NCBI GenBank assembly: GCA_002269645.1
Contig: NIVC01003302.1
Location: 1-64,000, forward strand
Source of the DNA: Macrostomum lignano
Lineage: Eukaryota
Reading direction: 5' to 3'
Length of the DNA stretch: 64,000 bases
In this document: piece by piece, positions 1,776-64,000 of the stretch
How positions within the stretch are numbered: the first letter of the stretch is position 1
Layout of the letters: every line of letters begins with the position of its first letter
Position numbers and translations under genes: made by a program
Notes under the pieces: model-generated
What the model was told of the DNA's origin: nothing
The model's input: only the letters and a program-made list of their open reading frames with translations
Databases searched by the model: none

Positions 1776-12161
<10,386 letters not shown>

Positions 12162-34900: not shown

Positions 34901-37900
34901 GCTCAGCCTGGAGGAGCAGGACCGCCGGCTGAACGCCATCCAGGACGAGCTGCAAGGATTCAAGGTGGGAGAGCCTTAGTGGGCGCTGCTTGGTTGTTCC
35001 AGAATCCCAGATCCCAACTCAGTAATCGCAGAATCTCAGATCCCAACTCAGTTTTCCCAGAATCCCAGATCCCAACTCAGTTATCCAGAATCCCAGATCC
35101 CAAACTCAGTTATCCCAGAATCCCAGATCCCAACTCAGTTATCCCAGAATCCCAGATCCCAACTCAGTTATCCCAGAATCCCAGATCCCAACTCAGTTTT
35201 CCCAGAATCCCAGATCCCAACTCAGTTATCCCAGAATCCCAGATCCCAAACTCAGTTATCCCAGAATCCCAGATCCCAACTCAGTTTTCCCAGAATCCCT
35301 GATCCCAAACTCAGTTATCCCAGAATCCCAGATCCCAACTCAGTTATCCCAGAATCCCAGATCCCAACTCAGTTATCCCAGAATCCCAGATCCCAAACTC
35401 AGTTATCCCAGAATCCCAGATCCCAACTCAGTTTTCCTAGAATCCCAGATCCCAAACTCAGTTATCCCAGAATCCCAGATCCCAACTCAGTTTTCCTAGA
35501 ATCCCAGATCCCAAACTCAGTTATCCCAGAATCCCAGATCCCAACTCAGTTTTCCCAGAATCCCAGATCCCAACTCATTTATCCCAGAATCCCAGAGAAC
35601 AGAGCTGATGCAGCAACCCCCATCCCCGCCACCTGCGCAGAGCAACATCGAAGAGATGGAGCGGGTGAACCAGAGCATCCAGGAGGCCTTCATCTTCGAC
35701 AACCCGCACTCGCCCTACACCATGGAGACCATCCGTGTTGGCTGGGAGCAGCTGCACACCTCCATTGCCAAGGCGCTTAACGAAGTGGCCAATCAGATTC
35801 TCACGAGGTGAGTCATGCACCTGGGTCAAGTCGTCGGCATACTCAACGATTCCTTATAGACGATCATTGTGAGCTCCTGTATGAGCGAGTCCATGTGTGA
35901 TGTCCAGAAGTGAGATTCGAATGGCTACTCGAGCTACCCGTAGACCCGCGCTCGAAGTCCTGTTTGCTGTCAGAGAGCAACTGTTTTTTCATTCGCTTCA
36001 AGATATTCGCTTTACATTCTTTTCTTACTACTCTTCAGTAGGCGGCAGTCAGATTTATCTATAAAAATCTAATTTCACCTATTCAGTTCTCAAAGCCTTT
36101 CAAAGTGTCAAGCGCTTGATTCAGTGTTTAACAGATCTGCCACAAGACAAGAGTGTGCAAGTTTTTTACACTTGCAGCTGTTTCCTTTGTAGCCAGCGTA
36201 GCACAAATGGGGTTTTACCAGAGACAAATATCAGGTACCAGTCGCGAATAGTTGAGGCTGGTGATTAGCGCGGCCTCATCGAGTTGGGGCTCCTTGCTCA
36301 AAACATTGCCTGGGGCTTGTTGTGCGACTCTCGCCCTTGATGGCCAGCCCCCAAGGCACAGAGAGTGTACATGCCGCCCTTGATGGCCAGCCCCCAAGGC
36401 ACAGACAGTGTACATGCCGCCCTTGATGGCCAGCCCCAAGGCACAGAGAGTGTACATGCCGCCCTTGATGGCCAGCCCCCAAGGCACAGAGAGTGTACAT
36501 GCCGCCCTTGATGGCCAGCCCCCAAGGCACAGAGAGTGTACATGCCGCCCTTGATGGCCAGCCCCCAAGGCACAGACAGTGTACATGCCGCCCTTGATGG
36601 CCAGCCCCCAAGGCACAGAGAGTGTACAAGCTTGGCAATAAGATATTCAGGGTCGCTGTACATCCTGTGTGAGCGCGTGCGTTTGCGTGCTTAGGGATCG
36701 GCGAAAAGGGCATGGCTTCCTCGCTGGTTGCAGCCTCCTCCAGTCAGACGAGTACAGCCTAGATGTGAGATGAGATAAGATAAGGAGATGAGATGGGATG
36801 GGAAAACTTTCAAATCAAGGTGACCGACTTTGCAGCGAGATCAGGCCTTGAAATAAATTTGCACAACTTTAACGCAAGCGGTTTCCCCACCGTCGCAGGG
36901 ACTCCAAGGGCATCACCAACGATGAGATGACGGAGTTCCGCAAGTGCTTCAACCACTTCGACAAGAGCAAAACCCGCCGCCTCGACCCCATCGAGTTCAA
37001 GGCCTGCCTGGTGTCCCTCGGCTACAACATCCGCAACGACCGGCAGGGCGAGCAGGACTTCGCGCGCATCATGGCGCTGGTGGACCCAACCGCACCGGCC
37101 AGGTCGGCTTCGACGCCTTCGTGGACTTCATGACCAGCGAGAAGACGGACCAGAACACTGCGGACCAGATCATACAGTCCTTCCGCATCCTGGCTGGCGA
37201 CCTGGTGAGCATTCTTCACCTCAGCTGACTTGCCCCCGACCCAGCTGACCTGACGCTTGACTCAGCTGACCTGACACTTGACCCAGCTGACCTGACACTT
37301 GACCCAGCTGACCTGACACTTGACCCAGCTGACCTGATACTTGACCCAGCTGACCTGACGCTTGACTCAGCTGACCTGACACTTGACCCAGCTGACCTGA
37401 CACTTGACCCAGCTGACCTGCCACTTGACCTAGCTGACCTGACACTTGACCCAGCTGACCTGACACTTGACACAGCTGACCTGATACTTGACCCAGCTGA
37501 CCTGACGCTTGACTCAGCTGACCTGACACTTGACCCAGCTGACCTGACACTTGACCCAGCTGACCTGCCACTTGACCTAGCTGACCTGACACTTGACCCA
37601 GCTGACCTGACACTTGACCTAGCTGCCCTGACACTTGACCCAACTTACCTGACACTTGACCCAGCTGATCTGACACTTGACCCAGCTGACCTGACACTTG
37701 ACCTAGCTGACATAACCCAGCTGACCTGACAAACGACCCAGCTGACCTCATACCTGACCCATTGCATTGCCCCAGCTGACTTGATACCTGAGCCCTGACC
37801 TAAGCAGATCTGATCCCAGCTCATTCGATACCGACCTCAATTGGCTTGACCCCAAATGACCTCCAGCGGTTTTGAAGCTGACCCAGCTGACCCAAAACTA

Positions 37901-38108: not shown

Positions 38109-39852
38109 GGGCCTCCAGCTGGACCGCCGCGCTGCTGCTTACTTTGAGTTCGGGCCGCTGCTGCCCTCCTTTCCGCCACTTCTGTCCGCCTCCGCCTCTG
38201 CCCCCCCCTTCGTCATTCGTTTCATTTTCCGCTAATTTTTCTTTCAGTTTTTCTATCCCAGCGGTTGGTTGCTGTGCGAGTTTCTTTTATTTGCTAAAAA
38301 ACTTGAGGAACATTTTGTTTTACTGAGCCGAGCCTTTTCGAATCGGCCCTCGAATACACGGAACTGTCTGCGCGGGCCGCAACCTTTTTCTCACTACTCT
38401 CAGTCCCAATGCCCGATTGCCCCATTGTTCCCGCACTGTTTTATCTGCTTGTATTTTTATTGATTTTTCATTGACTCCGCCGGCCCCCGCCTTCTGGCCG
38501 CTCAGCTGGAATCGAATTTCGACCAACTCGCAACGATGGGCTCACGTCCTGCTGCAGTATCAGTTTTAACCTGCTGTGTATTTTATTTCACATCCTCGTG
38601 ATAATTCTACTCACAGCATCGCACCTCTACTACTGCTATTACTGAGTAGTATTCGTCTGCTTTTTTGTTCGTTTTATTGCACAAATCAAAATTATTTCGA
38701 ATTTTAACAATTTGGGCCCTTGGCAGTTCCCGAGAGCGGATTTTCTGTTGATGTCTTGATCAAAATTTAAACGGGGACACTCGGGCTCTCTAGTCATCGA
38801 AGCACCTCTTGCAACACTGCGATTTTTCATCAAATCATTTCTGTTTTTTATATTTAACTAGAAGCAAACCTGCAACAGGGACCAGAAAATTGTTTTCATC
38901 GTGGCTTTTGCTTTCTTGGAAATTTATCGTTAAGTCGGCCTTTATTGACTGTTCGTTCTCGGAATTCTCTTAACACTAAAGTATTTCATTTAATCGTACT
39001 GCAAGTAGTATGAGGTGAACAAAAATAATATTAAGAACCAATCAATATTCTTCTTTAAGTTTCGCATTTTACCAAAAATATGAAATGTGCCTCATACTAC
39101 TGCCGGCGCGCGATGTCAGTAGATTAGCACTAAACTGCTGCTATTTGTTCTGGTTATACTACTGCTGGCTAAGTAGTTAGGCTTGTTGCCTGTTGTATAG
39201 AGCAGTATTGAGACCCGAGTTGCTGAGTTGCTGAGTAGCCCCCCACCCTGCACCTTGTTTGGCTTTATTGCTGCTCCAAATTAATTGCGATGAGTTTTAT
39301 TAATGTTTTTCGTTTTTTTACCGGGTTGACCTGCCCGCCTCCCGCCATTTTTCTTCCTCTGTTATTCATTTTTGCTTGCAATCTTTTTTTGAACTGAATC
39401 TGCCCAATCCGGTTTAGCGGTGTCCTTGTTTGTGCTTACCGATCCCGCTGCCTCCCTGCTTTTTGCTTATAGCCCTAAATTTTCTGTTTTGCCGGCGTCT
39501 TACTTGCCGCATCTTGGGACAACTGGGGATCCAACTCCATTCATTAGCCGTAATTAGTCCCACCTTTCCTGTAGATCCCACTCATATTTATCAGCTATCA
39601 ACTAGCTGCTTTGTTATGCTGATTTTCTTTCGAAGCCACCGCGTGTTGCTCCTTTTCTTCTTCCCGTTAGAATTGCTGCTTGATTTGTATTTTTCTATCC
39701 GCCCCTGTCCGGTTAGCAAAGTTCTCGCCCTCAGCCAGCACAACACGGCTCTGCGAGTGCACCTGCAGTATTTTCTATTTAAAAATTGTTCCTTTCTTCT
39801 TTTTAATCTAACAGCGACCAACCAATCGTCTAACACTCGCTTTTTATTGACT

Positions 39853-44002: not shown

Positions 44003-45643
44003 AAAATAATTTTTTTATTAAAACATCTTAAAAACAAAATGCTAAACATAAAAGAAGCACAATTTCAAACAAAAGTGGCACCATTTCAAACATTAAAGGC
44101 CACCATGTCAAACATATATGTGACTCCATGTCTAATATTAAAGAGCCACCATGTCAAACATTGAAGAGCCACCATGTCAAACATTAAAGAGCCACCATGT
44201 CGAACATTAAAGAGCCACCATATCGAACATTAAAGAGCCACCATGTCGAACATTAAAGAGCCACCATGTCCAACATTAAAGAGCCACCATGTCGAACAGT
44301 AAAGAGCCACTATGTTGAACATTAAAGAGCCACCATGTCAAACATTAAAGAGCCCCCATGTTGAACATTAAAGAGCCACTATGTCAAACATCAACGAGTC
44401 ACCATGTCAAGCGTATATATGACTCCATTTCAGACATTAAAGTGCCACCATGTCAAACATTAAAGAGCCACCATGTCAAGCGTATAAGTGACTCCATGTC
44501 AGACATTTAAGAGCCATCATTGCAAACATTAAAGTGCCACCAGGTCAAACATTAAAAAGCCACCATGTAAAACATAAAAGAGCCACCATGTCAAACATTA
44601 AAGAGCCACCATGTTGAACATAAAAGAGCCACCATGTCGAACATTAAAGAGCCATCATTATAGACATTAAAGTGCCACCAGGTCAAACATTAAAAAGCCA
44701 CCATGTAAAACATAAAAGAGCCACCATGTCGAACATTAAAGAGCCATCATTACAGACATTAAGGTGCCACCAGGTCAAACATTAAAGAGCCACCATGTCA
44801 AACACAAAACAGCTACCATGTCAAACATAAATGGGGTGCCTACTATCTTGGAGTGCTTGCTATCTGGAGATGCGTGCTATCTGGGGGTGCTTACTATCTG
44901 GGGGTGCTTGCTATCTAAGGGTGCTTGCTATCTAAGGGTGCTTGCTATTAGCTGGATGCTTGCTATCTTGGGGTGCTTGCTATTAGGTGGATGCTTGCTA
45001 TCTGGAGATGCTTGCTATCTGGGGGTGCTTGATATCTTGTGATGCTTGCTATCTAAGGGTGCTTGCTATTAGATGGATGCTTGCTATCTGGGGGTGCTTG
45101 CTTTCTAAGGGTGCTTGCTATTAGGTGGATGCTTGCTATCTGGGGTGCGTGCTATCTTGGAGTGCTTGCTATCTGGGGGTGCTTGCTATCTGGGGGTGCT
45201 TGCTATCTGGGGATGCTTGCTATCTTGGGGTGCTTGCTATTAGGTGGATGCTTGCTATCTGGGGTGCCTGCTATCTGGGGGTGCTTGCTATCTGGAGATG
45301 CTTGCTATCTGGGGGTGCTTGCTATCTGGGGGGTTGCTTGCTGTCCTGGGATGATTTCTTTTTGCATTGCCCTTCATTTGAGCAGTTTTTCTATTGTCTA
45401 TGTGAAGGCTTTAGTGGGCCGTCTTTTTGATACTTGTAGAGAGCCAGAGATTCTATCTAGATGCCCCCATCGGGGGCGAAGATTGCTAGTAGTTTTACTA
45501 TAAAAAGTCTTTCTATATCTATATTCATAGTCATTTAAGTTTTTTATAGCCTATCTATTAGGTATATTAATATTCATAGCTAACTAAACTAAAAATGAGT
45601 TGTCTATCTGTGAATGATAATGATAATAATGATAAAATATATA

Positions 45644-49500: not shown

Positions 49501-52189
49501 GAAGCATATGCCCTAGAAACGGTTTTTCTTATTCTGAAAATCGAATTCTGTTACCATAGCAACCGGTTTTTCTCATTCTGGTAATAACCTGTTACCATAG
49601 CAACCGGTTCTTCATTCTGGAAATCTAATTCTGTTACCATAGCAACCGGTTCTTCATTCTGGAAATCTGATCTGTTACCATAGCAACCGGTTTTTCTCAT
49701 TCTGGAAATCTAATTCTGTTACCATAGCAACCGGTTCTTCATTCTGGAAATCTAATTCTGTTACCATAGCAACCGGTTCTTCATTCTGGAAATCTAATTC
49801 TGTTACCATAGCAACCGGTTCTTCATTCTGGAAATCTAATTCTGTTATCATAGCAACCGGTTCTTCATTCTGGAAATCTGATCTGTTACCATAGCAACCG
49901 GTTTTTCTCATTCTGGAAATCTAATTCTGTTACCATAGCAACCGGTTTTTCTCATTCTGGAAATCTAATTCTGTTACCATAGCAACCGGTTCTTCATTCT
50001 GGAAATCTAATTTTAAAGTTTCACCTCCCCCTTTGCCGCAGGTCTGGGACGGCATCATCCAGATGGCTGCACAGAACGTGGAAAGCCTTCAGGAGCCGGA
50101 CACGGTGCGCCAGCTCTCCGTCCTGCTGCGCACCAACGTCAGCGCCTGCCGCAGCCTCGGCCACCCCTACGTGCGCCAGCTCGGCCGCAACTTCATGGAC
50201 ATGCTCAGCCTGTACAAACTGCTCAGCGAGGACATCAGCAAGGCGGTGGTCGCGCACGGCGAACTGGTGGCCAAGCAGCCGCTGATCCGGGCGATGCGCG
50301 GCGTCAAAAAGGAGACGCTGCGACTGCTCGACTGCTGGGTCGGCCGCAGCACTGACCCGGCCCTGGTGTCCGACAAGTTCGTGCCGCCCCTGTGCGAGGC
50401 CGTGCTTCTCGACTACCAGCGGAATGTCGCCTCTGCCAGGTATGGCGCTGCTGGACTCCTCCCTTCGGTGGCCCCACTGTGCTCAAGTGACCCCGGGTGT
50501 CCTCATCTGTCCTGATATGACCCCGCTTTCATGTCTTCTAGGAATCCCGCTGTCCTTATCTGTCCTGATATGACCCCGCTTTCATGTCTTCTAGGGATCC
50601 CGCTGTCCTTGTCTGTCCTGATATGAACCCGCTTTCATGTCTTCTAGGAATCCCGCTGTCCTTATCTGTCCTGATATGACCCCGCTTTCATGTCTTCTAG
50701 GGATCCCGCTGTCCTTGTCTGTCCTGATATGACCCCGCTTTCATGTCTTCTAGGAATCCCGCTGTCCTTATCTGTCCTGATATGACCCCGCTTTCATGTC
50801 TTCTAGGGATCCCGCTGTCCTTGTCTGTCCTGATATGACCCCGCTTTCATGTCTTCTAGGGATCCCGCTGTCCTTATCTGTCCTCAGGCGACCCCGCTGT
50901 CCTCAGATGACACCATAGTCAATAGAAAATTAGAAAGCCAATAAAGCGCATCAATTCATGATTATCCCCATGACACCCCGCAGAGAGCCGGAGGTGCTGG
51001 CCCTGCTGGCCACCATAGTCAGCAAGCTGGGCGAGCAAGCCAGTCAGCACGTGCCCCCGATGCTGGACGCCGTGTTCGAATGCACCCTGGAGATGCTCAG
51101 CCAAGACCAGCACGAGTTCCCGGAGCACCGGTTGAACCTGTTCACCCTTCTGGAGGCCGTCACTCAGAGCTGCTTCACCACCCTCATCCGCCTGCCCACC
51201 GACCGCCTGCGCATCGTGCTGGAGAGCGTGCTGTGGGCCGTGCGGCACAGCTTGAGGTCCGTCAGCGAGACCGGCCTCAGCATCGTGCTCCGCCTGCTGC
51301 AGAAGGTCGACTGCCTGGACCCGGCCGCTGCCGGCCAGTTCCACGCCAACTTCTTCATGAGCCTGCTCCAGCACCTGTTCTCCGTGCTCACCGACCCGCT
51401 GCAGGCCGGCCAGCTGTCTCAGGTGAGCTGCCGGAGGTTTTTCACTTCTGGTGTTCATGAGATGCCAGCCACTCCCAGAAACTCGCCAGATCCCGGCCAC
51501 TCCGACAATCCCAGAAGATCCCCAGAGATCCCAGCCACAATCACAGGAGATCCCAGCCACAATCCCAGGAGATCCCAGCCACAATCCCATGAGATCCCAG
51601 CCACAATCCCAGGATATCCCAGCCACAATCCCCAGAGATCCCAGCCACAATCCCAGGAGATCCCAGCCACAATCCCCAGAGATCCCAGCCACAATCACAG
51701 GAGATCCCAGTCACAATCCCTAGAGATCTCAGCCACAATCCCAGGAGATCCCAGCCACAGTCCCAGGAAATCCCAGTCATCAAGCTCCCCCCTGGCTCGC
51801 AGGTGAGCTCGGTGCTGTGCCTGATGTTTTCCCTGTGCGAGCGGGACCGGCTGCACACGCAGCTGCAGGCCAGCGTGAGCAACAGCGAGTTTGTGCTGCA
51901 GTCGCTCAGCGCGCTGCTGTCGGAGGCCTACCCGCACCTGCAGCGGCCGCAGATCGCCGTGTTCGTCCAGGGCTGCTTCTCGTTCAACGCCGACCAGAAG
52001 CGATTCCGCGAGCACCTGCGCGACTTCCTGGTGCAGATTCGCGAGTTCACCGGCGAGGACCTGAGCGACCTGTACCTGGAGGAGCAGCAGGAGGAGATCC
52101 GGCGGGCCCAGGAGGCCAAGCTGGCCCAGCAGTGCACCGTGCCCGGCATCCTCAACCCGCACGAGGTTCAGGACGCCATGGAGGACTGA
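46516..52189 (+). CDS. XPO1: Exportin-1 / CRM1, 1064 aa, 7 exons, intact frame
   Basis: Exons 46516-47550, 47965-48507, 48774-48920, 49186-49431, 50042-50439, 50984-51422, 51803-52189 (3195 nt). Motifs [42 protein letters not shown] (HEAT9 loop), [44 protein letters not shown]. Confidence 0.97.
47572..47810. repeat. 31-mer AGATCATGTTCCCTGGGCATCAGGGACCCAC in XPO1 intron 1
   Basis: Tandem units visible. Confidence 0.93.
49001..49170. repeat. 30-mer ATCCCACAGCTAATCCCAGTGATAGATTAT in XPO1 intron 3
   Basis: Tandem units visible. Confidence 0.93.
49545..50012. repeat. 42-mer TTCTGTTACCATAGCAACCGGTTCTTCATTCTGGAAATCTAA in XPO1 intron 4
   Basis: Tandem units visible. Confidence 0.95.
50506..50885. 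repeat. 53-mer x~7 in XPO1 intron 5
   Basis: CTGTCCTGATATGACCCCGCTTTCATGTCTTCTAGGGATCCCGCTGTCCTTAT units visible. Confidence 0.95.
51517..51765. repeat. 22-mer GAGATCCCAGCCACAATCCCAG in XPO1 intron 6
   Basis: Tandem units visible. Confidence 0.93.
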
Positions 52190-52828: not shown

Positions 52829-53440
52829 ACCCTTTGATGCAGCTGTGCTACCCTTTGATGCAGCTGTGCTACCCTTTGATGGAGCTCTGCTACCCTTTGA
52901 TGGAGCTGTGCTACCCTTTGATGGAGCTGTGCTACCCTTTGATGGAGCTCTGCTACCCTTTGATGGAGCTCTGCTACCCTTTGATGGAGCTGTGCTACCC
53001 TTTGATGCAGCTGTGCTACCCTTTGATGGAGCTGTGCTACCCTTTGATGGAGCTCTGCTACCCTTTGATGGAGCTCTGCTACCCTTTGATGGAGCTGTGC
53101 TACCCTTTGATGGAGCTGTGCTACCCTTTGATGGAGCTCTGCTACCCTTTGATGGAGCTGTGCTACCCTTTGATGGAGCTCTGCTACCCTTTGATGGAGC
53201 TGTGCTAACCTTTGATGGAGCTCTGCTACCCTTTGATGGAGCTCTGCTACCCTTTGATGGAGCTCTGCTACCCTTTGATGGAGCTGTGCTACCCTTTGAT
53301 GGAGCTCTGCTACCCTTTGATGGAGCTCTGCTACCCTTTGATGGAGCTCTGCTACCCTTTGATGGAGCTGTGCTAACCTTTGATGGAGCTCTGCTACCCT
53401 TTGACGGAGCTGCGCTGCCCTTTGACGGAGCTGCGCTGCC
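52829..53440. repeat. 21-mer CCCTTTGATGGAGCTGTGCTA downstream of XPO1
   Basis: Tandem units visible. Confidence 0.95.
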
Positions 53441-54220: not shown

Positions 54221-54424
54221 TCACTTTGGTGGCGGCTGCTGCTGCGGCTCCTGCTGTCCGCCAGGAGCCTGGTAGCGCTCGTTGTTAGGGTTCAGCTGGG
54301 TGGCGTGGTTATCCAGGTCCGCCTTGGTGCCGGTGCCCTGGTAGCCGGGCTGGTGGCCCGCGTAGCGCTCATTGTTGGGGTTGCACTGGTTGGACTTGTT
54401 GTCGCTGGCAGCTTTGTCAGACAT
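54221..54424 (-). CDS. Uncharacterised 67-aa N/Q/G-rich micro-protein, paralog A (double DNxxNQxNPNNxxY motif)
   Basis: MSDKAASDNKSNQCNPNNERYAGHQPGYQGTGTKADLDNHATQLNPNNERYQ...; strongly GC3-biased codons; two close paralogs nearby; AG acceptor 10 nt before the ATG. Confidence 0.85.
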   Translation of the reverse strand: MSDKAASDNKSNQCNPNNERYAGHQPGYQGTGTKADLDNHATQLNPNNERYQAPGGQQEPQQQPPPK

Positions 54425-54558
54425 GTTGCTAATCTGGATTAGTAGCTGGATTTACTAGTCTGTGTGTAATGCGTTTGATCACTCTGAGGACTCGCGTTAG
54501 CTCAGCTCTGGCGGCAGTCGGTGACAGCGGGGAGGAAGCGGCGCTCTGGCTTGGCCTC

Positions 54559-54690
54559 TTAAATACGCCCTCTCAGTCATTGCTAAAAATAGAATCTGAG
54601 AACAACAACCTGCAATAGCATTGGCGCTTTTGTACTCTGATGAACCCAGACTCTCGGTTTATTTCTTGGAAATCTGCCTATTTCCTAGAA
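54559..54690 (-). promoter_or_regulatory. Putative promoter of paralog A: TATTTAA plus paired TTCN3GAA (STAT/GAS-type) sites
   Basis: TATTTAA at 54565-54559 (-); TTCTTGGAA 54663-54671 and TTCCTAGAA 54682-54690. Confidence 0.55.
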
Positions 54691-55269
54691 ATGTTTACAC
54701 AGCTTGCCTGTTTACTACTGCAGTCCAGGAGGGTGTGTGCCGTGCAATTTCGGTTAAGCCGGTCAATTGAATTTGAGTTGGCAAGAGCAGCCTTGTTTAC
54801 TGCATTGCACAATGTCTGCTCTGCACCTGCATTCATGAGGTATAGGCAACCCTTCTGTTTACCACAGCGGCTTGTTGCAAATTTACTTTAGTTTAGGCAA
54901 GAGCAAATTGTGACAGGGCTGAGGACCGGTGTCATGGCAACCATTATCCTAACTTTGGATGCGTTATTTTATTTGGGGCCAGAAGTCATGCCAAGCGCTA
55001 GGCTGATTTCTCTCTGGGGTTTACGAGATTAAAGACCTGTCAATAATCACAGTTTAAGCCGTGATCTGATATCACCTAAATGAATACTGCCGAATCTTTT
55101 ATAGCCGCGCATTCTTGTCCGCAAGTCTGTTAACAAAATTTCAAAGTTCTCTGACTTTCGGTACATCTAAATCTAGACAGTATATGTACGTATTGTACAT
55201 TAAACTTACAATTAATGTACAATAAAGTTTGTCTGCCGCGTATTCGGATTTAAAACTTTACTTGCTTAG

Positions 55270-55790
55270 TGGCGCATACGAACGACATCCTTGCGTCTTT
55301 GACAACAACCAAGGAGAAGAACAACTTCAACAGCAAGGTTCGACAAACGGAGCGCAACTTCAGGTACGAGGGCCAGCAGCTGTTCTGTGATGTCAGAAGA
55401 AGCGCCATCGGTCAACGGAGCGTCGCCTGGAGGTGGAAGATCAAAGAGATCTGTCAACTGATCTAAGAAGATCACACCTCTGCGACTGGAGGAGCTCATC
55501 AGGGGATTAAGTCCACCCCATCGAAGCTGCAGGAGCGATTTCACTGGGACGGCAGGACAAAATTTGTGCACGCTCGTACGTTCAGAAGTCCGCGTCTGCC
55601 AGCAGCCTCAGCCTTAGAGTCGGTGACAAGGTCCTGCTGCGGAACTTTGTCCGTGACGATCTGAAACGCGGCGAACTGAAGACACCGTGGTGTACCAAGG
55701 TATACACGGTCGAACGTGTCGTCCTAAGCAACAACCTGTACGGACTCGAGAGGGAAGTGTACAGCGATCAATGGCCACCAGGCAGGTGAT
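55270..55790 (+). mobile_element. Degenerate Ty3/Gypsy-like retrotransposon pol remnant
   Basis: Fragments KEKNNFNSKVRQTERNFRYEGQQLF (resembles the region before the integrase Zn finger) and LRVGDKVLLRNFVR...GELKTPW..KVYTV (resembles the integrase C-terminal module). The core is missing and no LTR pair was found. Confidence 0.5.
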
Positions 55791-56647
55791 TTCAAGAATT
55801 TCTAATATTTTAAGAGTAAATTTTCTAATTGGCGTCATCTAAAGTACTTGGTGTGAACTAGAGACTGAAAAAGGTGTTTCACTTGACTCACTAGAAACTT
55901 TGTGATTTAGAGCAAATGTAAAATTAATGGAAGATCTAGAAAGTAGGACTTAAACGACAAAGAAGTTTGATAATTCAACATATGCTCAACATTTCTTTGC
56001 GTATCTTTAAAACGTGCCGGATTTATCTCAAGGACAAGCTAGACTAGCTATCTGCGGTTAATTTATTTTTCACATCAAGTCTTACAATATTATAATGTGC
56101 ATTATTTAATTTTGTGTACGAGTACAAATCATTCAGTTCTGGATTGTTGTTGTCTTTTTGTTGAAATGTACCTTGTAGTAATAATTTATTGTCTACTTGC
56201 AATGTTGTCGGAATATTTAAGATAAGATAAGATAAGATAAGATAAGCATAAGCATAAGATAGTTTCTGCTCAGTGAGAGAATTCAAGATAACCGAATGAG
56301 TTTGGATACTGAAAAGTATTTTTATTCAGCTGAATAAAACAACGCAGAATTTTTTTAAGACGTGACACCGGGGCACAGTGGCAGGGCTTGAAGCTTGTCC
56401 GCAGTGGAACTCAATTTTAACAAAAACTGAAAAGATGCTCAATTTAATGCTGTGTTATTATTGCACTACTAAAAGTAGCTGATTCGCAAAAAAATCTTGT
56501 GATTATATTTTTTGTAATTATTGCTCAAATCATGCGTCCTCAAAAGTACAAAGTTGATGGTAAACAGCCACAGAGGCATCAGGTTATTCTACGAGAGCTC
56601 AATCAGTATTTCTGTAACTGTCAGCTCTGCTCCGTGACTTTCGCCTC

Positions 56648-56857
56648 TCAAAACCGCTCATTTCTTCGAATGTCCCCCGACCGGCCCTGGCCGCCGCCTC
56701 CGCCCTGGTAGCGCGAGTTGTTGGGGTTCAGCTGGTTGCCATGGTTACTCAGGTCGGCCTTGGTCCCGGTGCCGCCATAGCCGCTCTGGTGGCCCTGGTA
56801 GCTGGAGTTGTTGGGGTTGCACTGGTTGGACTTGTTGTCCCTGCCGGATTTGTCCAT
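56648..56857 (-). CDS. Uncharacterised 69-aa N/Q/G-rich micro-protein, paralog B
   Basis: MDKSGRDNKSNQCNPNNSSYQGHQSGYGGTGTKADLSNHGNQLNPNNSRYQGGGGG...; predicted 5'UTR intron 57479-56868 (GTGAGT...CCCCCAG). Confidence 0.85.
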   Translation of the reverse strand: MDKSGRDNKSNQCNPNNSSYQGHQSGYGGTGTKADLSNHGNQLNPNNSRYQGGGGGQGRSGDIRRNERF

Positions 56858-56966
56858 GGCCGCTGCTCTGGGGGTGCGCGGTGAGGTGCGGATGCAGTCC
56901 TAAGTCAATCCATGGCTTTAGTAAGAGCTCAAGTCTGAGCTATACTCGTAGGGAACTGAAATTGTG

Positions 56967-57375
56967 CCACAGAGAGAATGGCGCCATACAGGAAGAATGG
57001 CGCCACACAGAGAGAATGGCGCCACACAGAGAGAATGGCGCCACACAGAGAATGGCGCCACACAGAGAGAATGGCGCCACACAGAGAGAATGGCGCCACA
57101 CAGAGAGAATGGCGCCACACAGAGAGAATGGCGCCACACAGAGAGAATGGCGCCACACAGAGAGAATGGCGCCACACAGAGAGAATGGCGCCACACAGAG
57201 AGAATGGCGCCACACAGAGAGAATGGCGCCACACAGAGAGAATGGCGCCACACAGAGAGAATGGCGCCACACAGAGAGAATGGCGCCACACAGAGAGAAT
57301 GGCGCCACACAGAGAATGGCGCCACACAGAGAGAATGGCGCCACACAGAGAGAATGGCGCCACACAGAGAGAATG
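56967..57375. repeat. 19-mer ACAGAGAGAATGGCGCCAC in the predicted 5'UTR intron of paralog B
   Basis: Tandem units visible. Confidence 0.95.
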
Positions 57376-57422
57376 GTGCCGTTCTTGTAAAAAAACTTAC
57401 CGTTTTTTTCAAAAGCTGAGAA

Positions 57423-57682
57423 TTCTTAGAAAAGCAAAAAATTCTTCTCGAAGCTTTGGAACTCGATGAAGAAACTCACGGGTCTGAGCGGCTCCTCGGG
57501 ATTTGTATTTACTATTTATAGCCTGAAATGTGCGTGACGGTGGAAGGAGTCAGAAACTCTGGCTTAAAAGTACACCCCAGGTGCGGAGCACGTGAGAGAA
57601 GAAAAACACGGTGTTTTTGCTTTCGAAATACCTGCCTGCCTGACAGAAATTTCTTGGAAACTTGAGAACTCATTTCCAGGAA
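57423..57682 (-). promoter_or_regulatory. Putative promoter of paralog B: canonical TATAAATA plus paired TTCN3GAA sites and a third intronic site
   Basis: TATAAATA at 57520-57513 (-), about 35 nt before the GTGAGT donor at 57479; TTCTTGGAA 57651-57659; TTCCAGGAA 57674-57682; TTCTTAGAA 57423-57431. Confidence 0.6.
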
Positions 57683-58273
57683 ATTCAATCAAAAAGTACA
57701 TTTAGTTTGAGCAACAACTTTACCCTGGCTCCACCCGAACTTCAAGTCTGTTTATTGCAGAGATTAGAATCAGGACTGGACTGAGAGCGCTTGCGCTGGC
57801 AAGGGCGTGGCGGGGACTACTGTCTGAAAAATAATCGATACTTTTAAGTAGTCCTTGGAGTTCTGACAGAAATTCTCGCGCGACTTGGATTGGACGCCAA
57901 CTCCGAATCGCGCGCTATCATAGGAGCGCATTGGTTTAAGCGCGCACCGCGCCGGTCTAACGGTACCTTGCAGCTGCCTGCTCAGGAGAGGCACAAGAGC
58001 GCACTGGGGTGCTTAGGATGAGTTTCATCTTAGGCCAAACTGAGTTGAAAAAATTCGACAAACAAAAATACACAAAAGACATGCAGGGAGAAGCCGAGTT
58101 CATGCTGCATTTTCAAAGCGACCTTCGAGTTTGAACATGAGAAAAATTTTTAAGATCCAACTTGCTAATCTTGTATTTTAAATAGTCAAATGTGAAACCA
58201 ACACAGACTGCTGTCTTTGTTAATCTTTTGGCAATCTTCTGCATGCTGGCTGGGGCAGTCTTTGTCACCGACT

Positions 58274-58516
58274 TCACTGCAAGGTGCACCAAGACTTCTG
58301 CTGCTCTTGCTCAGCGGCACCGCTGCCGCTGCCGCCTCCACCGCCACTGGGGCCTCCGCCCTGCTGGTAGCGCCAGTTGTTGGGGTTCAGCTGGTTGGCA
58401 TGGTTATCCAGATCCGCCTTGGTGCCGGTGCCCTGGTAGCCGGGCTGGTGGCCCTGATAGCGCTCATTGTTGGGGTTGCACTGGTTGGACTTATTGTCGT
58501 TGTTTGACTTGTCCAT
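58274..58516 (-). CDS. Uncharacterised 80-aa N/Q/G-rich micro-protein, paralog C
   Basis: MDKSNNDNKSNQCNPNNERYQGHQPGYQGTGTKADLDNHANQLNPNNWRYQQGGGPSGGGGGSGSG...; CCTTCAG acceptor ~25 nt upstream of the ATG. Confidence 0.85.
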   Translation of the reverse strand: MDKSNNDNKSNQCNPNNERYQGHQPGYQGTGTKADLDNHANQLNPNNWRYQQGGGPSGGGGGSGSGAAEQEQQKSWCTLQ

Positions 58517-58628
58517 GCTGTCGCTGATGAAACAGTGATGCCTGAAGGTTTCAGCCGTTCGGTGGCTTGGAAAGCCGAATTTTGAAGCAAAAATATTAAA
58601 GTGCAAGAAGATGTGATCTCAGATTCTA

Positions 58629-61600
58629 CTAGCAATCTTCGCCCCCCGATGGGGGACATCTGGATAGAATCTCTGTTCTCTACAAGTAACAAAAAAACAG
58701 CCAAAAATCCTTCAAAAAGACAACAGACAAACTGCTCAAATGAAGTGCATTGCAAAAAGAAATCATCCCAAGACCGCAAGCATCCCCCAGATAGCAAGCA
58801 TCCCCCAGATAGCAAGCATCCCCAAGATAGCAAGCATCCCCAGATAGCAAGCATCCCCAAGATAGCAAGCATCCCCCAGATAGCAAGCGTCCCCCAGATA
58901 GCAAGCATCCCCCAGATAGCAAGCATCCCTCAGATAGCAAGCATCCCCCAGATTTCAAGCATCCCCCAGATAGCAAGCATCCCCCGGATAGCAAGCATTC
59001 CCCAGAGAGCAAGCATCCCCCAGATAGCAAGCATCCCTCAGATAGCAAGCATCCCCCAGATAGCAAGCATCCCCCAGATAGCAAGCATCCCTCAGATAGC
59101 AAGCATCCCCCAGATAGCAAGCATCCCCCAGATAGCAAGCATCCCCCAGATAGCAAGCATCCCCAAGATAGCAAGCATCCACCAGACAATAAGTAGCTAG
59201 TGCGACAATTTCCTTAGCATTATAGCGGCTCCTTTAAAATTCGCTTACTTTTACGTTTGAAATTGTGTATCTTTTATGTTTAACAGGGTGGCTCTTTTAT
59301 GTTATACATTGTGGCTCTTTTATGTTATACATTGTGGCTCTTTTTTGTTCTACGCTCGTACATGGTAACTCTTTTATGTTTGATACGGTGGCTTTTCAAT
59401 GTCTGACATGGTGGCTCTTCTATGTTTGACATGGGGGCTCTTCTATGTTTGACATGGGAGCTCTTCTATGTTTGACAAAGTGGCTTTTTAATGTTTGACA
59501 TGGTGGCTCTATTATGTTTGACATGGTGGCTCTATTATGTTTGACATGGTGGCTCTTTAATGTTCAAAAAGTTGGCTCTTTTATGTTTGACATGGTGGCT
59601 CTTTAATGTTTGACATGGTGGCTCTTTAATGTTTGACATGGTGGCTCTTTAATGTTAGACAAAGTAGCTCTTTAATGTTTGACATGATGGCTCTTAAATG
59701 TTAGACATGGGGGCTCTTTACTTTTTGACATGGTGGCTCTTTAATGTTGGACATGGTGGCCTTTAATGTTAGACATGGTGGCTCTTTAATGTTCGACATA
59801 AAGTCACTTATATGTTTGACATGGTGGCTCTTTAATGTTTGACATGGTGGCTCTTTTATGTTCGACATGGTGTCGCTTCAATGTTCGACATGGAGTTACG
59901 TATATGTTTTACATGGTGACTCTTTTATGTTCGACATGGTGGCTCTTTAATGTTTGACATGGGGTCTCTTCAATGTTTGACATGGAGTTACGTATATGTT
60001 TGACATGGTGGCTCTTTAATGTTTTACATGGTGGCACTTTCATGTTTGACCTGGTGGCTCTTTAATATTTGACATGTTGGCTCTTTTATGTTTGACATGG
60101 TGGCTCTTTTATCTTTGACATGGTGGCTCTGTAATGTTCGACATGGAGTCATGTATATGTTTCACATGGTAGCTCTTAAATGTTCGACATGGTGGCTCTT
60201 TAATGTTCAACATGGAGTCATGTATATGTTTGACATGGTGGCTCTTAAATGTTCGACATAGTGGCTCTATAATGTTTGACATGGTGGCTCTTTAATGTTC
60301 GACATGGCGTCATGTATATGTTTGACATGGTAGCTCTTGAATGTTCAACATGGAGTCATGTATATGTTTGACATGGTGGCTCTTAAATGTTCGACATGGT
60401 GGCTCTTTAATGTTTGACATAGTGTCTCTTTACTGTTTGACATGGAGTCATGTATATGTTTGACATGGTGGTTCTTTAATGTTAGACATGGTGGCTCTTT
60501 TATGTTTTGCATGGTGGCTCTTTTATGTTCGACATGGTGTCTCTTCAATGTTTGACATGGCGTCATGTATATGTTTGACATGGATGCTCTTGTATTTTTA
60601 ACATGTTGACTCTTTAATTTTCGAAATGGTGGCTCTTAATTGTCTAACATGGAGTCACGTATATGTTTGACATGGAGTCATGCATATGCCTGATATGGTA
60701 GCTCTTTAATGTTTTACATGGAGTCACGTATATGTTTCACATGTTGGGTATTTTATGTTTGACATGGTGGTTCTTAAATGTTCGACATGGTGGCTCTTTA
60801 ATGTTTTACATGGTGGCACTTTCATGTTTGACCTGGTGGCTCTTTAATGTTTGACATGGTGGCTCTTTAATATTTGACATGGTGGCCCTTTTATGTTCGA
60901 CATGGTGGCTCTTCAATGTTTGACATGGAGTCACGTATATGTTTTACATGGTGGCTCTTTTATGTTCGACATGGCGTCATGTATATGTTTGACATGGTAG
61001 CTCTTGAATGTTCAACATGGAGTCATGCATATGTTTGACATGGTAGCTCTTGAATGTTCAACATGGAGTCATGTATATGTTTGACATGGTGGCTCTTAAA
61101 TGTTCGACATGGTGGCTCTTTAATGTTAGACATAGTGTCTCTTTAATGTTTTGCATGGTGGCTCTTTTATGTTCGACATGGTGTCTCTTCAATGTTTGAC
61201 ATGGAGTCATGTATATGTTTGACATGGTGGCTCTTGTATTTTTAACATGTTGGCTCTTTAATGTTCGACATGGTGGCTCTTTAATGTCTAACATGGAGTC
61301 ACGTACGAGTATATGTTTGACATGGAGTCATGTATATGTCTGATATGGTAGCTCTTTAATGTTTTACATGAAGTCACGTATATGTTTCACATGGTGGCTA
61401 TTTTATGTTTGACATGGTGGTTCTTAAATGTTCGACATGGTGGCTCTTTAATGTGTTACATGGTGGCACTTTCATGTTTGACCTGGTGGCTCTTTAATGT
61501 TTGACATAGTGTCTCTTTAATGTTTGACATGGAGTCATGTATATGTTTGACATGGTAGCTCTTGAATGTTCGACATAGAGTCATGTATATGTCTGCCATG

Positions 61601-62770
61601 GTGGCTCTTTAATGTTAGACATGGTGGCACTTTCATGTTTGACCTGGTGGCTCTTTAATGTTTGACATGGTGGCTCTTTAATATTTGACATGGTGGCCCT
61701 TTAATATTTGACATGGTGGCCCTTTAATGTTCGACATGGTGGCTCTTCAATGTTCGACATGGAGTCATGTATATGTTTGACCTGGTTGCTCTTTAATGTT
61801 TGACATGGTGGCTCTTTAATGTTCGACATGGTGGCTCTTTTAGGGTTGAAATGGTGGCTCTTTAATGTTTGACATGGTGGCTTTTTAATGTTCGACATGG
61901 TGGCTCTTTTATGTTCGACATGGCGTCATGTATATGTTTGACATGGTAGCTCTTGAATGTTCAACATGGAGTCATGTATATGTTGGACGTGGTGGCTCTT
62001 TAATGTTCGACATGGTGGCTCTTTAATGGTTGACATGGTGGCTCTTTAATGTTCGACATGGTAGCTCTTTAATGTTCGACATGGTGGCTCTTTAATGGTC
62101 GACATGGTGGCTCTTTAATGGTCGACATGGTGGCTCTTTAATGTTTGACATGGTGGCTCTTTAATGTTTGACATTGTGCTTTTTTGTGTTTAGCATTTTG
62201 TGTTTTTAAGATTTTTGAATAAAAAAATCTTTTTGCACTACTAAGATTCGAACCCAGGTCGTAGCATTAGCAGTCCAGTCTGTTCGCATCTATGCTATCT
62301 CTTGTCTTGAATTGTGGCCCTTATAATTTAATTTTTATAGCAAATCGGTTAGAGTAAAAAGTTATGACATAATCAATTTTATCAGTCAGCCAGTATCAGT
62401 GTCAATTTAAGTTAGCAATATTGTTACACAATTTAAATCAAGTTTTGTGTGCATTTGTTCGGCACTGTTTTCAACTGGTTGTGATGTAATCTTTATCACA
62501 ATTGGAATTCAGTCAGTCAGTTTTTTCTCTAGCATTCTTACAATGCATTTCAGGTCGAAAGAGCTGCTTGACCTTTGCAAAAAAGCATGTTTTTCGAATA
62601 TTTAATCCCTTTAAAATTGAGCAATTTCTTAGCCAAGATGCATGTACCGTCCCAGGAAAATTTCTGATCGAATGGTGCAAGTTTGAAGAAAATCGATTGA
62701 GCCATTTTTTCTGAAATCTATCGCATACCTACCTACCTACCCACAGACAACTCATTTTTAGTATATAGGA
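58629..62770 (-). mobile_element. Non-autonomous Helitron (same family as 43161-45489) with a greatly expanded 23-mer array
   Basis: 5' TCCTATATACTAAAAATGAG at 62770; 3' CCCCCATCGGGGGG hairpin, then GAAGATTG-CTAG|T at 58629. 18-mer array ~58775-59185; 23-mer TGTTTGACATGGTGGCTCTTTAA array ~59280-62175. Confidence 0.85.
62235..62305 (-). pseudogene. tRNA-Ser(GCT)-like segment inside the second Helitron copy
   Basis: Reads GATAGCATAGATGCGAACAGACTGGACTGCTAATGCTACGACCTGGGTTCGAATCTTAG on the minus strand; homologous to 43931-44002. Confidence 0.6.
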
Positions 62771-64000
62771 CTAGCTAAAGTTTTGCCCCCCTTCGAGGAG
62801 CAGAAATAATTAATATTCGTCTAATATAATATACCTTTTAGCAGGAGTACTTTAAGTGTTTTTCTTAAGCTTAAGCTTAAAATAGGAATTTTTGGAGATC
62901 GTTAATAACGCATTTTAGGTAAAACAAAACTATCAACTTTTTACAGTTTTTTAGTTTAGAGCCCTGTATATGTCAACGTGTTTGATAAAAGTTATTTTAT
63001 TTATTTAGTTTATAAAACCCCCAGATAGCAAGCATCCCCCAGATAGCAAGCATCCCCCAGATAGCAAGCATCCCCCAGATAGCAAGCATCCCCCAGATAG
63101 CAAGCATCCCCCAGATAGCAAGCATCCCCCAGATAGCAAGCATCCCCCAGATAGCAAGCATCCCCCAGATAGCAAGCATCCCCAGATAGATAGCATCCCC
63201 CAAATAGCAAGCATCCACCAGACAATAAGTAGCTAGTGCGACAATTTCCTTAGCATTATAGTGGCTCCTTTAAAATTCGCTTACTATTACGTTTGAAATT
63301 GTGTATCTTTTATGTTTGGCATGGTGGCTCTTTAATGTTTGACATGGTGGCTCTTTTATGTTGACATGGTGGCTCTTTTATACTTGACATGGTGGCTCTT
63401 TACTGTTCGAAATGGTGGCTCTTTTATGTTTGACATGGTGGCTCTTTTAGGTTTGACATGATGGCACTATTATGTTTTGACATAGTGGCTCTTTAATGTT
63501 TGACATGGTAGCTCTTAAATGTTTGACATGGTAGCTCTTAAATGTTTGACATGGTAGCTCTTTTATGTTCAACATGGTGGCTCTTTATTGTTTGACATGG
63601 TGGCTCTTTAATGTTTAACCTGGTGGCTCTTTTATGTTTAACCTGGTGACTCTTTTATGTTTGACATGGCGGCTCTCTAATGTTTGACAAAGTGGCTATT
63701 TAATGTTCGAAATGGTGGCTCTTGAAAGTTTGACATAAAGTCACATATATGTTTGAGATGGTGGCTCTTAAATGTTTGACATGGTGGCTCCTAAATGTTT
63801 GACATGGTGGCTCTTTACTGTTTGAAATGGTGGCTCTTTAATGTTCTACATGGTAACTCTTTTATGTTCGACATGGTGGCTTTTTAATGTCTGACATGGT
63901 GGCTCCCAAATGTTTGACACGGTGGCTCTTTAATGTTCTTTATGGTGGCTCTTTAATATTCTACATGGTGGCTCTTTTATGTTTGATACGGTGGCTTTTT
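62771..64000 (-). mobile_element. Third Helitron copy, 3' part, joined head-to-tail to the previous copy; continues beyond the window
   Basis: Same 23-mer and 18-mer arrays and the same linker (AAGGAAATTGTCGCACTAGCTACTTATTGTC). It has a different 3' tail that ends GCTCCTCGAAGGGGGGC-AAAACTTTAG-CTAG directly before the TC of the next copy. Confidence 0.78.

What the first reader, a model, noticed from the sequence alone, without database searches (positions are those of the whole stretch)
54559..57682. Paired STAT-consensus sites sit at matching positions upstream of TATA boxes in two micro-protein paralogs
Seen: paralog A has TTCTTGGAA plus TTCCTAGAA (19 bp apart) ~100-125 bp above TATTTAA. 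Paralog B has TTCTTGGAA plus TTCCAGGAA (23 bp apart) ~130-160 bp above TATAAATA, and a third site, TTCTTAGAA, in its 5'UTR intron. The surrounding DNA is not alignable by eye, so the motifs look selectively retained. Established: TTCN3GAA is the STAT/GAS consensus, and tandem sites ~20 bp apart favour cooperative STAT tetramers. A single site occurs by chance roughly every 4 kb, so the pairing and placement carry the argument. Inference: cytokine-, injury- or infection-inducible genes. BCL6- or HSF-like readers are alternatives.
Basis: partly seen in the sequence, partly recalled or inferred. Interest (0 to 1): 0.7.

Follow-up and report, generated by a model that had tools for sequence, protein, structure and literature searches.

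The report
Shared STAT5-type site pair in flatworm promoters
Two of three neighbouring genes for a tiny, uncharacterised protein in the flatworm Macrostomum lignano share one short upstream DNA block made of two STAT5-type binding sites; this is probably a real regulatory switch, but which factor reads it and what signal triggers it remain untested.

Summary
All five TTCN3GAA sites are at the stated coordinates, with the stated spacings (19 and 23 bp) and distances to TATA-like boxes.

- **Not chance.** 0.1 close pairs are expected per 64 kb and 2 are seen (P = 0.002). The four promoter sites are the best matches in the window to a 13-bp palindrome, ATTTC-N3-GAAAT.
- **Only shared block.** The sole detectable similarity between the two upstream regions is a 32-36 bp module, ATTTCYWGGAAAT-N7/11-TTTCCAAGAAAT. 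It has the same order and orientation relative to each gene.

- The window is Macrostomum lignano, and there are three tandem paralogs. The third (C) has no such site within more than 5 kb upstream.
- The "intron" site lies upstream of the best splice donor, so in the predicted first exon.
- Module-to-TATA distances are similar, not matching (104/123 vs 137/160 bp).
- Start sites are unverified in a genome with common trans-splicing.
- No paired sites occur near family genes in seven distant loci.
- Three near-identical M. lignano copies keep the sites, but are too similar to inform.

The 9-mers match sequences listed at human STAT5 ChIP-seq targets, and the literature reports STAT5-like genes in flatworms. 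A shared functional element is likely. STAT as its reader is plausible. Injury or infection inducibility is speculation.

The parts
54221..54424 (-). Paralog A coding sequence, 67 aa plus stop. It belongs to a conserved NQCNPNN / GTGTKADLDNHxNQLNPNN micro-protein family.
   Evidence: Homologs across protostomes.
54559..54565 (-). TATA-like box of A (TATTTAA on the gene strand), 135 bp upstream of the ATG.
   Evidence: Near-consensus only; the start site was not verified.
54661..54692 (-). Module of A. Proximal site TTCCAAGAA (54663-54671) and distal site TTCTAGGAA (54682-54690) on the gene strand, separated by a 10-bp gap. Both are full ATTTC-N3-GAAAT palindromes.
56648..56857 (-). Paralog B coding sequence, 69 aa plus stop. 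The TTCTTCGAA at 56662-56670 lies inside its 3' end, is not of YNR type, and is probably incidental.
56968..57380 (.). 19-bp tandem array (about 22 copies) filling the predicted 5'UTR intron of B.
57395..57401 (-). Predicted 5' splice donor of the B 5'UTR intron (G|GTAAGT on the gene strand).
   Evidence: Sequence only, with no RNA evidence.
57423..57431 (-). Third B site (TTCTAAGAA on the gene strand). It lies in the predicted 5'UTR exon 1 and matches the extended palindrome more weakly (8/10).
57513..57520 (-). TATA box of B (TATAAATA on the gene strand).
57649..57684 (-). Module of B. Proximal site TTCCAAGAA (57651-57659) and distal site TTCCTGGAA (57674-57682) on the gene strand, separated by a 14-bp gap. 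Order and orientation are the same as in A.
58274..58516 (-). Paralog C coding sequence, 80 aa plus stop. There is no GAS-type site upstream, neither exact anywhere from 58517 to 64000 nor with one mismatch within 58517-58790, and no TATA-like box within 58517-59300.

Best explanation
The two pairs are copies of one short cis-regulatory module. It consists of two 13-bp palindromes of the form ATTTC-N3-GAAAT, separated by 10 bp in A and 14 bp in B, and it sits about 95-160 bp upstream of TATA-type core promoters. It serves two of three tandem micro-protein genes in Macrostomum lignano.

Inferred mechanism: a dimeric transcription factor with STAT5-like specificity, most plausibly the flatworm STAT5-like protein, occupies both palindromes. 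Binding may be cooperative. The result is co-regulation of paralogs A and B, while paralog C has separate regulation.

Shown here:
- the module exists;
- it is non-random;
- it is the only conserved block between the two upstream regions;
- it matches the STAT5-type consensus.

Inferred only:
- that the TATA-like boxes mark the real start sites;
- that the sites activate transcription.

The upstream signal is unknown.
For: - Close pairs: 0.099 expected per 64 kb, 2 observed, P = 0.002, and both lie in front of paralogous genes.
- The best local alignment of the two 400-bp upstream regions is exactly the module: score 15 against a null of 11.1 +/- 1.6. Everything else outside the CDS core is unalignable.
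- The 12-mer TTTCCAAGAAAT occurs exactly twice in the window, once at each proximal site.
- The four sites score 10, 10, 9 and 10 out of 10 against ATTTC-N3-GAAAT. All other TTCN3GAA sites in the window score 6-9.
- All four are TTCYNRGAA. The same 9-mers are listed as binding-site sequences at human STAT5A/B ChIP-seq target genes (PMC3907443).
- A planarian STAT homolog called stat5 is reported (PMC8797187). STAT5A appears among human-homolog names of M. lignano genes (PMC5946080).
- A Stat5b-like motif was recovered from ATAC-seq of three flatworms including M. lignano (PMC11398382).
- The sites are intact in all three M. lignano copies of the locus.
- TATA-box promoters are used in M. lignano annotation, for example at Hsp20 and in LTRs.
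Against: - Paralog C has no such site in 5.5 kb upstream in the window, nor in 5.2 kb upstream in the third copy of the locus.
- No close pair occurs anywhere in seven loci from other species that together carry about ten family genes.
- The three M. lignano copies are about 98.5-99% identical in these promoters, so their conservation carries no weight.
- There is no transcript, start-site, accessibility or expression evidence. No Logan transcript contig carries A or B.
- 38.8% of M. lignano genes are trans-spliced and polycistronic precursors exist. TATA-like strings are common in the window.
- I did not find or test a STAT gene in this genome myself.
Confidence: 0.42

Rival explanations
1. 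The module is functional but is read by a different factor. Candidates include another dimeric protein recognising ATTTC-N3-GAAAT, a GGAAA-reading factor of the Rel/NFAT or ETS type, a BCL6-like zinc-finger repressor, or an uncharacterised flatworm protein.
For:
- Every site contains GGAAA on one strand, the core I recall for NFAT/Rel-type sites.
- The + strand reading TTCCTAGAAA of the A distal site resembles the BCL6 consensus as I recall it.
- One survey did not detect STAT in Platyhelminthes (PMC13203501).
Against: - The symmetric half-sites with a fixed 3-bp spacer in all four sites point to a dimer of the STAT kind rather than a monomeric GGAAA reader.
- BCL6 is, to my knowledge, a vertebrate protein, and only one of the four sites fits its consensus.
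- STAT5-like genes are reported in flatworms.
Confidence: 0.25
2. There is no function. The pair is a leftover of common ancestry, or a short patch copied between the two upstream regions, or a chance find in a scan that tested many motifs.
For: - Apparent dS between the coding cores is only 0.21-0.39, so the duplicates may not be very old.
- The alignment score of the module alone is only modestly above the null (p about 0.04).
- Paralog C and the distant orthologs do without the module.
- A reader scanning for any known motif carries a multiple-testing burden.
Against: - Everything else upstream and downstream of the coding core is unalignable. Neutral retention of two full 13-bp palindromes in the same order and orientation is therefore very unlikely.
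- Given TTCN3GAA, a full 4/4 match at the extended positions has P of about 0.004 per site, and three of four sites have it.
- P(>=2 close pairs) = 0.002, before requiring that both lie upstream of paralogs.
Confidence: 0.18
3. The sites do not lie in promoters. The three same-strand genes are matured by spliced-leader trans-splicing from a longer precursor, the TATA-like strings are incidental, and the module acts as an intergenic or intronic element, or not at all.
For: - 38.8% of M. lignano genes are trans-spliced, and about 7% of transcripts are multi-gene precursors (PMC5730564).
- C, B and A lie head to tail on one strand.
- TATAWAW is frequent in the window.
- C has no TATA-like box within 780 bp upstream, and it has a plausible acceptor just before its ATG.
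Against: - The gaps between genes are 1.4 and 2.2 kb and contain repeat arrays.
- B has a perfect TATAAATA followed about 110 bp later by a consensus GGTAAGT donor, as expected for a first exon.
- The promoter stretches of A and B are better conserved among the three copies of the locus (about 99%) than the surrounding 94-97%.
Confidence: 0.12
4. The sites are heat-shock elements read by HSF, making these genes heat-stress genes.
For: - TTC and GAA are the HSE building blocks.
- M. lignano uses canonical HSEs upstream of Hsp20 and some LTRs.
- The proteins are small, hydrophilic and Asn/Gln/Gly-rich, like some stress proteins.
Against: - Canonical HSEs have inverted nGAAn units in a 5-bp register, TTCnnGAA. 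All sites here have a 3-bp spacer, and no third unit is in register.
Confidence: 0.03

Closest known systems
Tandem GAS (gamma-activated sequence) elements bound by STAT5 dimers or tetramers in vertebrate promoters
   Same: - The 9-bp palindrome TTCYNRGAA.
- Exact 9-mers (TTCCAAGAA/TTCTTGGAA, TTCTAGGAA/TTCCTAGAA, TTCCTGGAA/TTCCAGGAA, TTCTAAGAA) listed at human STAT5A/B ChIP-seq target genes (PMC3907443).
- Two sites 10-14 bp apart, within the range I recall for STAT5 tetramer sites.
- A promoter-proximal position upstream of a TATA box.
   Different: - The organism is a flatworm with no known cytokine-receptor-JAK axis, and JAK and STAT presence in the phylum is disputed in the literature.
- No binding or expression data exist.
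- The target genes encode an uncharacterised micro-protein.
- The extended ATTTC/GAAAT flanks are more strictly kept here than GAS definitions require.
Drosophila Stat92E target sites (TTCN3GAA, often clustered; from my own knowledge)
   Same: An invertebrate STAT of the STAT5/6-like lineage reading 3-bp-spaced TTC/GAA palindromes, often in clusters near stress- and injury-induced small-protein genes.
   Different: No homology of the target genes, no evidence here for Upd/Domeless/Hopscotch-like components, and inducibility untested.
Stat5b-like motif recovered from flatworm ATAC-seq (PMC11398382)
   Same: Same organism among those studied, and the same motif class reported as a used regulatory word.
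   Different: That study links the motif to higher accessibility in muscle than in neurons, not to injury or infection. I could not check whether these two loci are among its peaks.
Heat-shock elements (HSE)
   Same: TTC/GAA inverted repeats upstream of small hydrophilic-protein genes.
   Different: The spacer is 3 bp rather than 2 bp, and there is no 5-bp register of three or more units.

Membership tests
GAS / STAT-binding element | 9-bp palindrome TTCN3GAA | tested here: met
   Four promoter sites and one 5'UTR site.
GAS / STAT-binding element | STAT5-type core TTCYNRGAA with T/A-rich flanks | tested here: met
   All five sites are YNR. The four promoter sites match ATTTC-N3-GAAAT at 9-10 of 10 positions. 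The identical 9-mers are listed at human STAT5 ChIP-seq target genes.
GAS / STAT-binding element | Tandem arrangement at a spacing compatible with cooperative (tetramer) binding | tested here: inconclusive
   The gaps are 10 bp (A) and 14 bp (B), or 19 and 23 bp centre to centre. These fall in the range I recall from the STAT5 tetramer literature (Soldaini 2000, cited). That range is from memory, and flatworm STAT behaviour is unknown.
GAS / STAT-binding element | A STAT protein encoded and expressed in the organism | not tested
   Literature only. A planarian stat5 homolog is reported (PMC8797187) and STAT5A appears as a homolog name in an M. lignano gene list. A survey reports none detected in Platyhelminthes. 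No tool here searches the M. lignano genome as a whole.
GAS / STAT-binding element | STAT occupancy and STAT-dependent transcription | not testable with these tools
   Needs EMSA, CUT&Tag, RNAi or a reporter assay.
GAS / STAT-binding element | Conservation at orthologous promoters | tested here: not met
   No close pair in seven loci from other species. These are phylum-level distances, so this is a weak test. The three M. lignano copies keep all sites but are about 99% identical there.
TATA-box core promoter | TATAWAW about 30 bp upstream of a mapped transcription start | tested here: inconclusive
   B has a perfect TATAAATA and A has TATTTAA. No 5'-end data were available, and trans-splicing is common.
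Heat-shock element | At least three inverted nGAAn units in 5-bp register (TTCnnGAA) | tested here: not met
   All sites have a 3-bp spacer and no third unit in register.
BCL6 site | TTCCT(A/C)GAA(A/G)(G/C), consensus from memory | tested here: not met
   Only the A distal site (TTCCTAGAAAT on the + strand) comes close. The other three do not fit.

The most novel reading that the evidence does not exclude
An uncharacterised micro-protein family (50-80 aa, two NQxNPNN repeats, no Pfam family) is found across protostomes. In a regenerating flatworm it would be a direct target of a STAT5-like factor through a lineage-specific tandem palindrome module. That would give a first read-out gene and a compact reporter element for STAT signalling in Platyhelminthes, where the very existence of the pathway is disputed.
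Probability: 0.15. Interest if true: 0.5.

Novelty: new member of a known kind. Interest (0 to 1): 0.3.

Why it matters
If the module is read by STAT, it would be a ready-made 32-36 bp reporter element for STAT activity in M. lignano, where transgenesis is established. It would also help settle whether flatworms use STAT signalling, and in which tissue or condition. It would attach a first regulatory handle to a widely conserved micro-protein family with no known function. As it stands, this is a well-supported motif prediction and not a demonstrated pathway.

Tried and rejected
1. Transcript contigs for 5' ends. Exact look-ups of A and B returned only genome contigs and no assembled RNA.
2. 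Copies of the locus within M. lignano as a conservation test. L002 is 98.3% identical. L012 is 94-97% identical overall but about 99% in the promoters. Both are too similar to inform.
3. Distant orthologs. Rotaria, Pinctada, Magallana and four unnamed assemblies have no paired sites. This is only a weak refutation at such distances.
4. Expression tables. The locus tag of the third copy of paralog A (BOX15_Mlig011114g1) is absent from all main texts searched and from the supplements of two M. lignano RNA-seq papers. One of those supplements held no identifier containing 'Mlig01', so that negative is meaningless.
5. Function of the micro-protein. There is no Pfam, NCBIfam or PDB match, and no paper contains the peptide motifs. 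The below-threshold PF22698 hit on two homologs is spurious.
6. A possible third target near the 38913/38956 pair. Neighbouring ORFs gave nothing interpretable.
7. HSE and BCL6 readings were rejected on spacer and consensus grounds.
8. A database search for a STAT protein was not run. A vertebrate query would be swamped by vertebrate clusters, and a negative result would mean nothing.
Full report
**What the window is.** An exact-protein look-up places the window on contig NIVC01003302.1 of assembly GCA_002269645.1, with identical coordinates. NIVC00000000 is the Mlig_3_7 genome of the free-living flatworm Macrostomum lignano (PMC5730564).

The region holds three tandem micro-protein genes, not two, all on the minus strand:
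- A: CDS 54221-54424, 67 aa.
- B: CDS 56648-56857, 69 aa.
- C: CDS 58274-58516, 80 aa.

A CRM1/exportin-1 gene lies next to them.

The proteins belong to a strongly conserved family with no Pfam, NCBIfam, PDB or literature match. Its invariant columns include Q13, C14, N15, P16, G30, G32, D36 and Q43 (numbered on protein A). It has two NQ(C/L)NPNN repeats. Members occur in rotifers, molluscs, insects, mites and springtails.

On the gene strand the arrangement is the same for both genes:
- A: cATTTCTAGGAAATaggcagATTTCCAAGAAATa
- B: aATTTCCTGGAAATgagttctcaaGTTTCCAAGAAATt

Distances from site centre to TATA centre are 104 and 123 bp for A (TATTTAA, 54559-54565). For B they are 137.5 and 160.5 bp (TATAAATA, 57513-57520). 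The positions are therefore similar but offset by about 33 bp.

The fifth site (57423-57431) lies 22 bp upstream of the only strong splice donor, GGTAAGT at 57401-57395. It is therefore in the predicted first exon rather than the intron.

**Is it more than chance?**
- The window has 23 TTCN3GAA sites against about 17 expected. Nine of them sit in two tandem repeat arrays.
- Pairs 9-30 bp apart are expected 0.099 times per window. Two are seen, both in front of the paralogs, giving P(>=2) = 0.002 before their location is considered.
- The exact 12-mer TTTCCAAGAAAT occurs twice in 64 kb, once at each proximal site.
- Against the extended palindrome ATTTC-N3-GAAAT, the four promoter sites score 10, 10, 9 and 10 of 10. 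All other sites in the window score 6-9.

**Are the promoters otherwise related?** No.
- BLAST aligns only about 150-185 bp of coding core between any two paralogs. Alignment starts at the ATG or a few bases before it and ends before the C-terminal tails.
- A Smith-Waterman comparison of the 400-bp upstream regions of A and B returns the module itself as the best alignment, with score 15 against a shuffle null of 11.1 +/- 1.6. A-C and B-C give nothing above the null.
- Apparent dS on the 135-nt core is only 0.21-0.39. This sits oddly with fully unalignable flanks. Strong codon bias, gene conversion of the core, or duplication of the coding part alone could each explain it.
- Under any of these, two 13-bp palindromes kept in the same order and orientation are best explained by constraint or by convergent gain. 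Either points to function.

**What does not fit.**
- Paralog C has no TTCN3GAA anywhere from 58517 to the window end. It has no one-mismatch site in the 270 bp upstream and no TATA-like box within 780 bp. Its upstream region is filled with an 18-bp array and a 23-bp satellite.
- On the third copy of the locus (L012), 5.2 kb upstream of C holds only two unrelated single sites.
- Seven loci from other species, with about ten family genes, contain no close pair at all. These are phylum-level distances, so the result weakens the claim but does not kill it.
- The two other M. lignano copies of the locus, L002 and L012, keep all five sites. Their promoters are about 99% identical to the window, so this carries no weight.

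**Who reads it?**
- All sites are TTCYNRGAA, the STAT5-type core. The same 9-mers are listed as binding-site sequences at human STAT5A/B ChIP-seq target genes (PMC3907443).
- The symmetric half-sites with a fixed 3-bp spacer argue for a dimer of the STAT kind. They argue against HSF, which uses a 2-bp spacer in a 5-bp register.
- The literature on flatworm STAT is mixed. A 2026 survey did not detect STAT in Platyhelminthes (PMC13203501). A planarian stat5 homolog is reported as up-regulated in a dsRNA response (PMC8797187). STAT5A appears among human-homolog names of M. lignano genes (PMC5946080). A Stat5b-like motif was recovered from ATAC-seq of three flatworms including M. lignano, with higher accessibility in muscle than in neurons (PMC11398382).
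- I could not search the M. lignano genome for STAT with the tools at hand.
The one relevant data set points to muscle.

**Start sites.** 38.8% of M. lignano genes are trans-spliced, and multi-gene precursors exist. TATA-like strings are frequent in this window. No RNA contigs for these genes were retrievable.

In favour of independent promoters:
- B has a perfect TATAAATA followed by a consensus donor.
- The gaps between genes are 1.4-2.2 kb.
- The promoter stretches are better conserved among the three copies of the locus than their surroundings.

**Verdict.** A shared functional cis-module in front of A and B is likely, at about 0.7. STAT as its reader is plausible, at about 0.4. The physiological trigger is unknown. 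This is a good motif-level prediction of a known kind of element in an unusual organism. It is testable with existing M. lignano transgenesis and RNAi, and it is of modest interest until then.

Noticed in passing
window 58274-58516 (minus strand); also P0070 / L013 1379-1630: Paralog C ends in ...KSWCTLQ*, a CaaX-like tail. The homolog P0070, from an AT-rich genome, ends in ...SWCQIL*. A and B lack this tail. Some family members may therefore be prenylated and membrane-anchored.
   Followed up: no
window 54221-58516; proteins P0001-P0093: The micro-protein family is strongly conserved across rotifers, molluscs, insects, mites and springtails, and one dinoflagellate transcriptome record also hits. 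It has 13 invariant columns, including one Cys in the first NQCNPNN repeat. It has no Pfam, NCBIfam, PDB or literature match.
   Followed up: partly
L012 about 7568-7780 (NIVC01000020.1): The copy of paralog B on the third copy of the locus carries a 5-bp deletion in the conserved SNQC codons and a 1-bp insertion near the 3' end. It is a probable recent pseudogene or an assembly error. Its upstream module and TATA box are intact.
   Followed up: partly
window 54221-58516: The coding cores of the three paralogs are 83-93% identical with dS of 0.21-0.39. Alignability nevertheless stops abruptly at or within a few bases of the ATG and before the C-terminal tails. This suggests gene conversion of the core, strong codon bias, or duplication of the coding part only.
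   Followed up: partly
window 58776-62178 and 63018-64000: The same composite occurs twice upstream of C: an 18-bp array (GCAAGCATCCCCCAGATA, 23 and 11 copies) followed by a 23-bp satellite (122 and more than 31 copies). Different arrays of 19 and 21 bp lie in the B 5'UTR intron (56968-57380) and at 53000-53432.
   Followed up: partly
window 38911-38964: There is another good extended site, CTTTCTTGGAAAT (9/10), with a weaker partner TTCTCGGAA 43 bp away, in an AT-rich stretch. No nearby gene could be assigned.
   Followed up: partly
window 35054-35560 and 50536-50756: Nine of the window's 23 TTCN3GAA sites lie in two tandem repeat arrays, the second within the span of the CRM1/exportin gene. 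They inflate the raw count and are unrelated to the finding.
   Followed up: partly
window 55600-55790 (+ strand): By my own reading of the sequence, one frame reads ...VGDKVLLRNFVRDDLKRGELKTPWCTKVYTVERVVLSNNLYGLE.... This resembles the C-terminal part of a retroelement integrase and may be a decayed transposon fragment between A and B. It was not verified with any profile.
   Followed up: no
window 58626-58788 vs 45329-45492: A 165-bp stretch just upstream of paralog C recurs at 87% identity, in inverted orientation, near 45.4 kb. It is probably a dispersed repeat.
   Followed up: no
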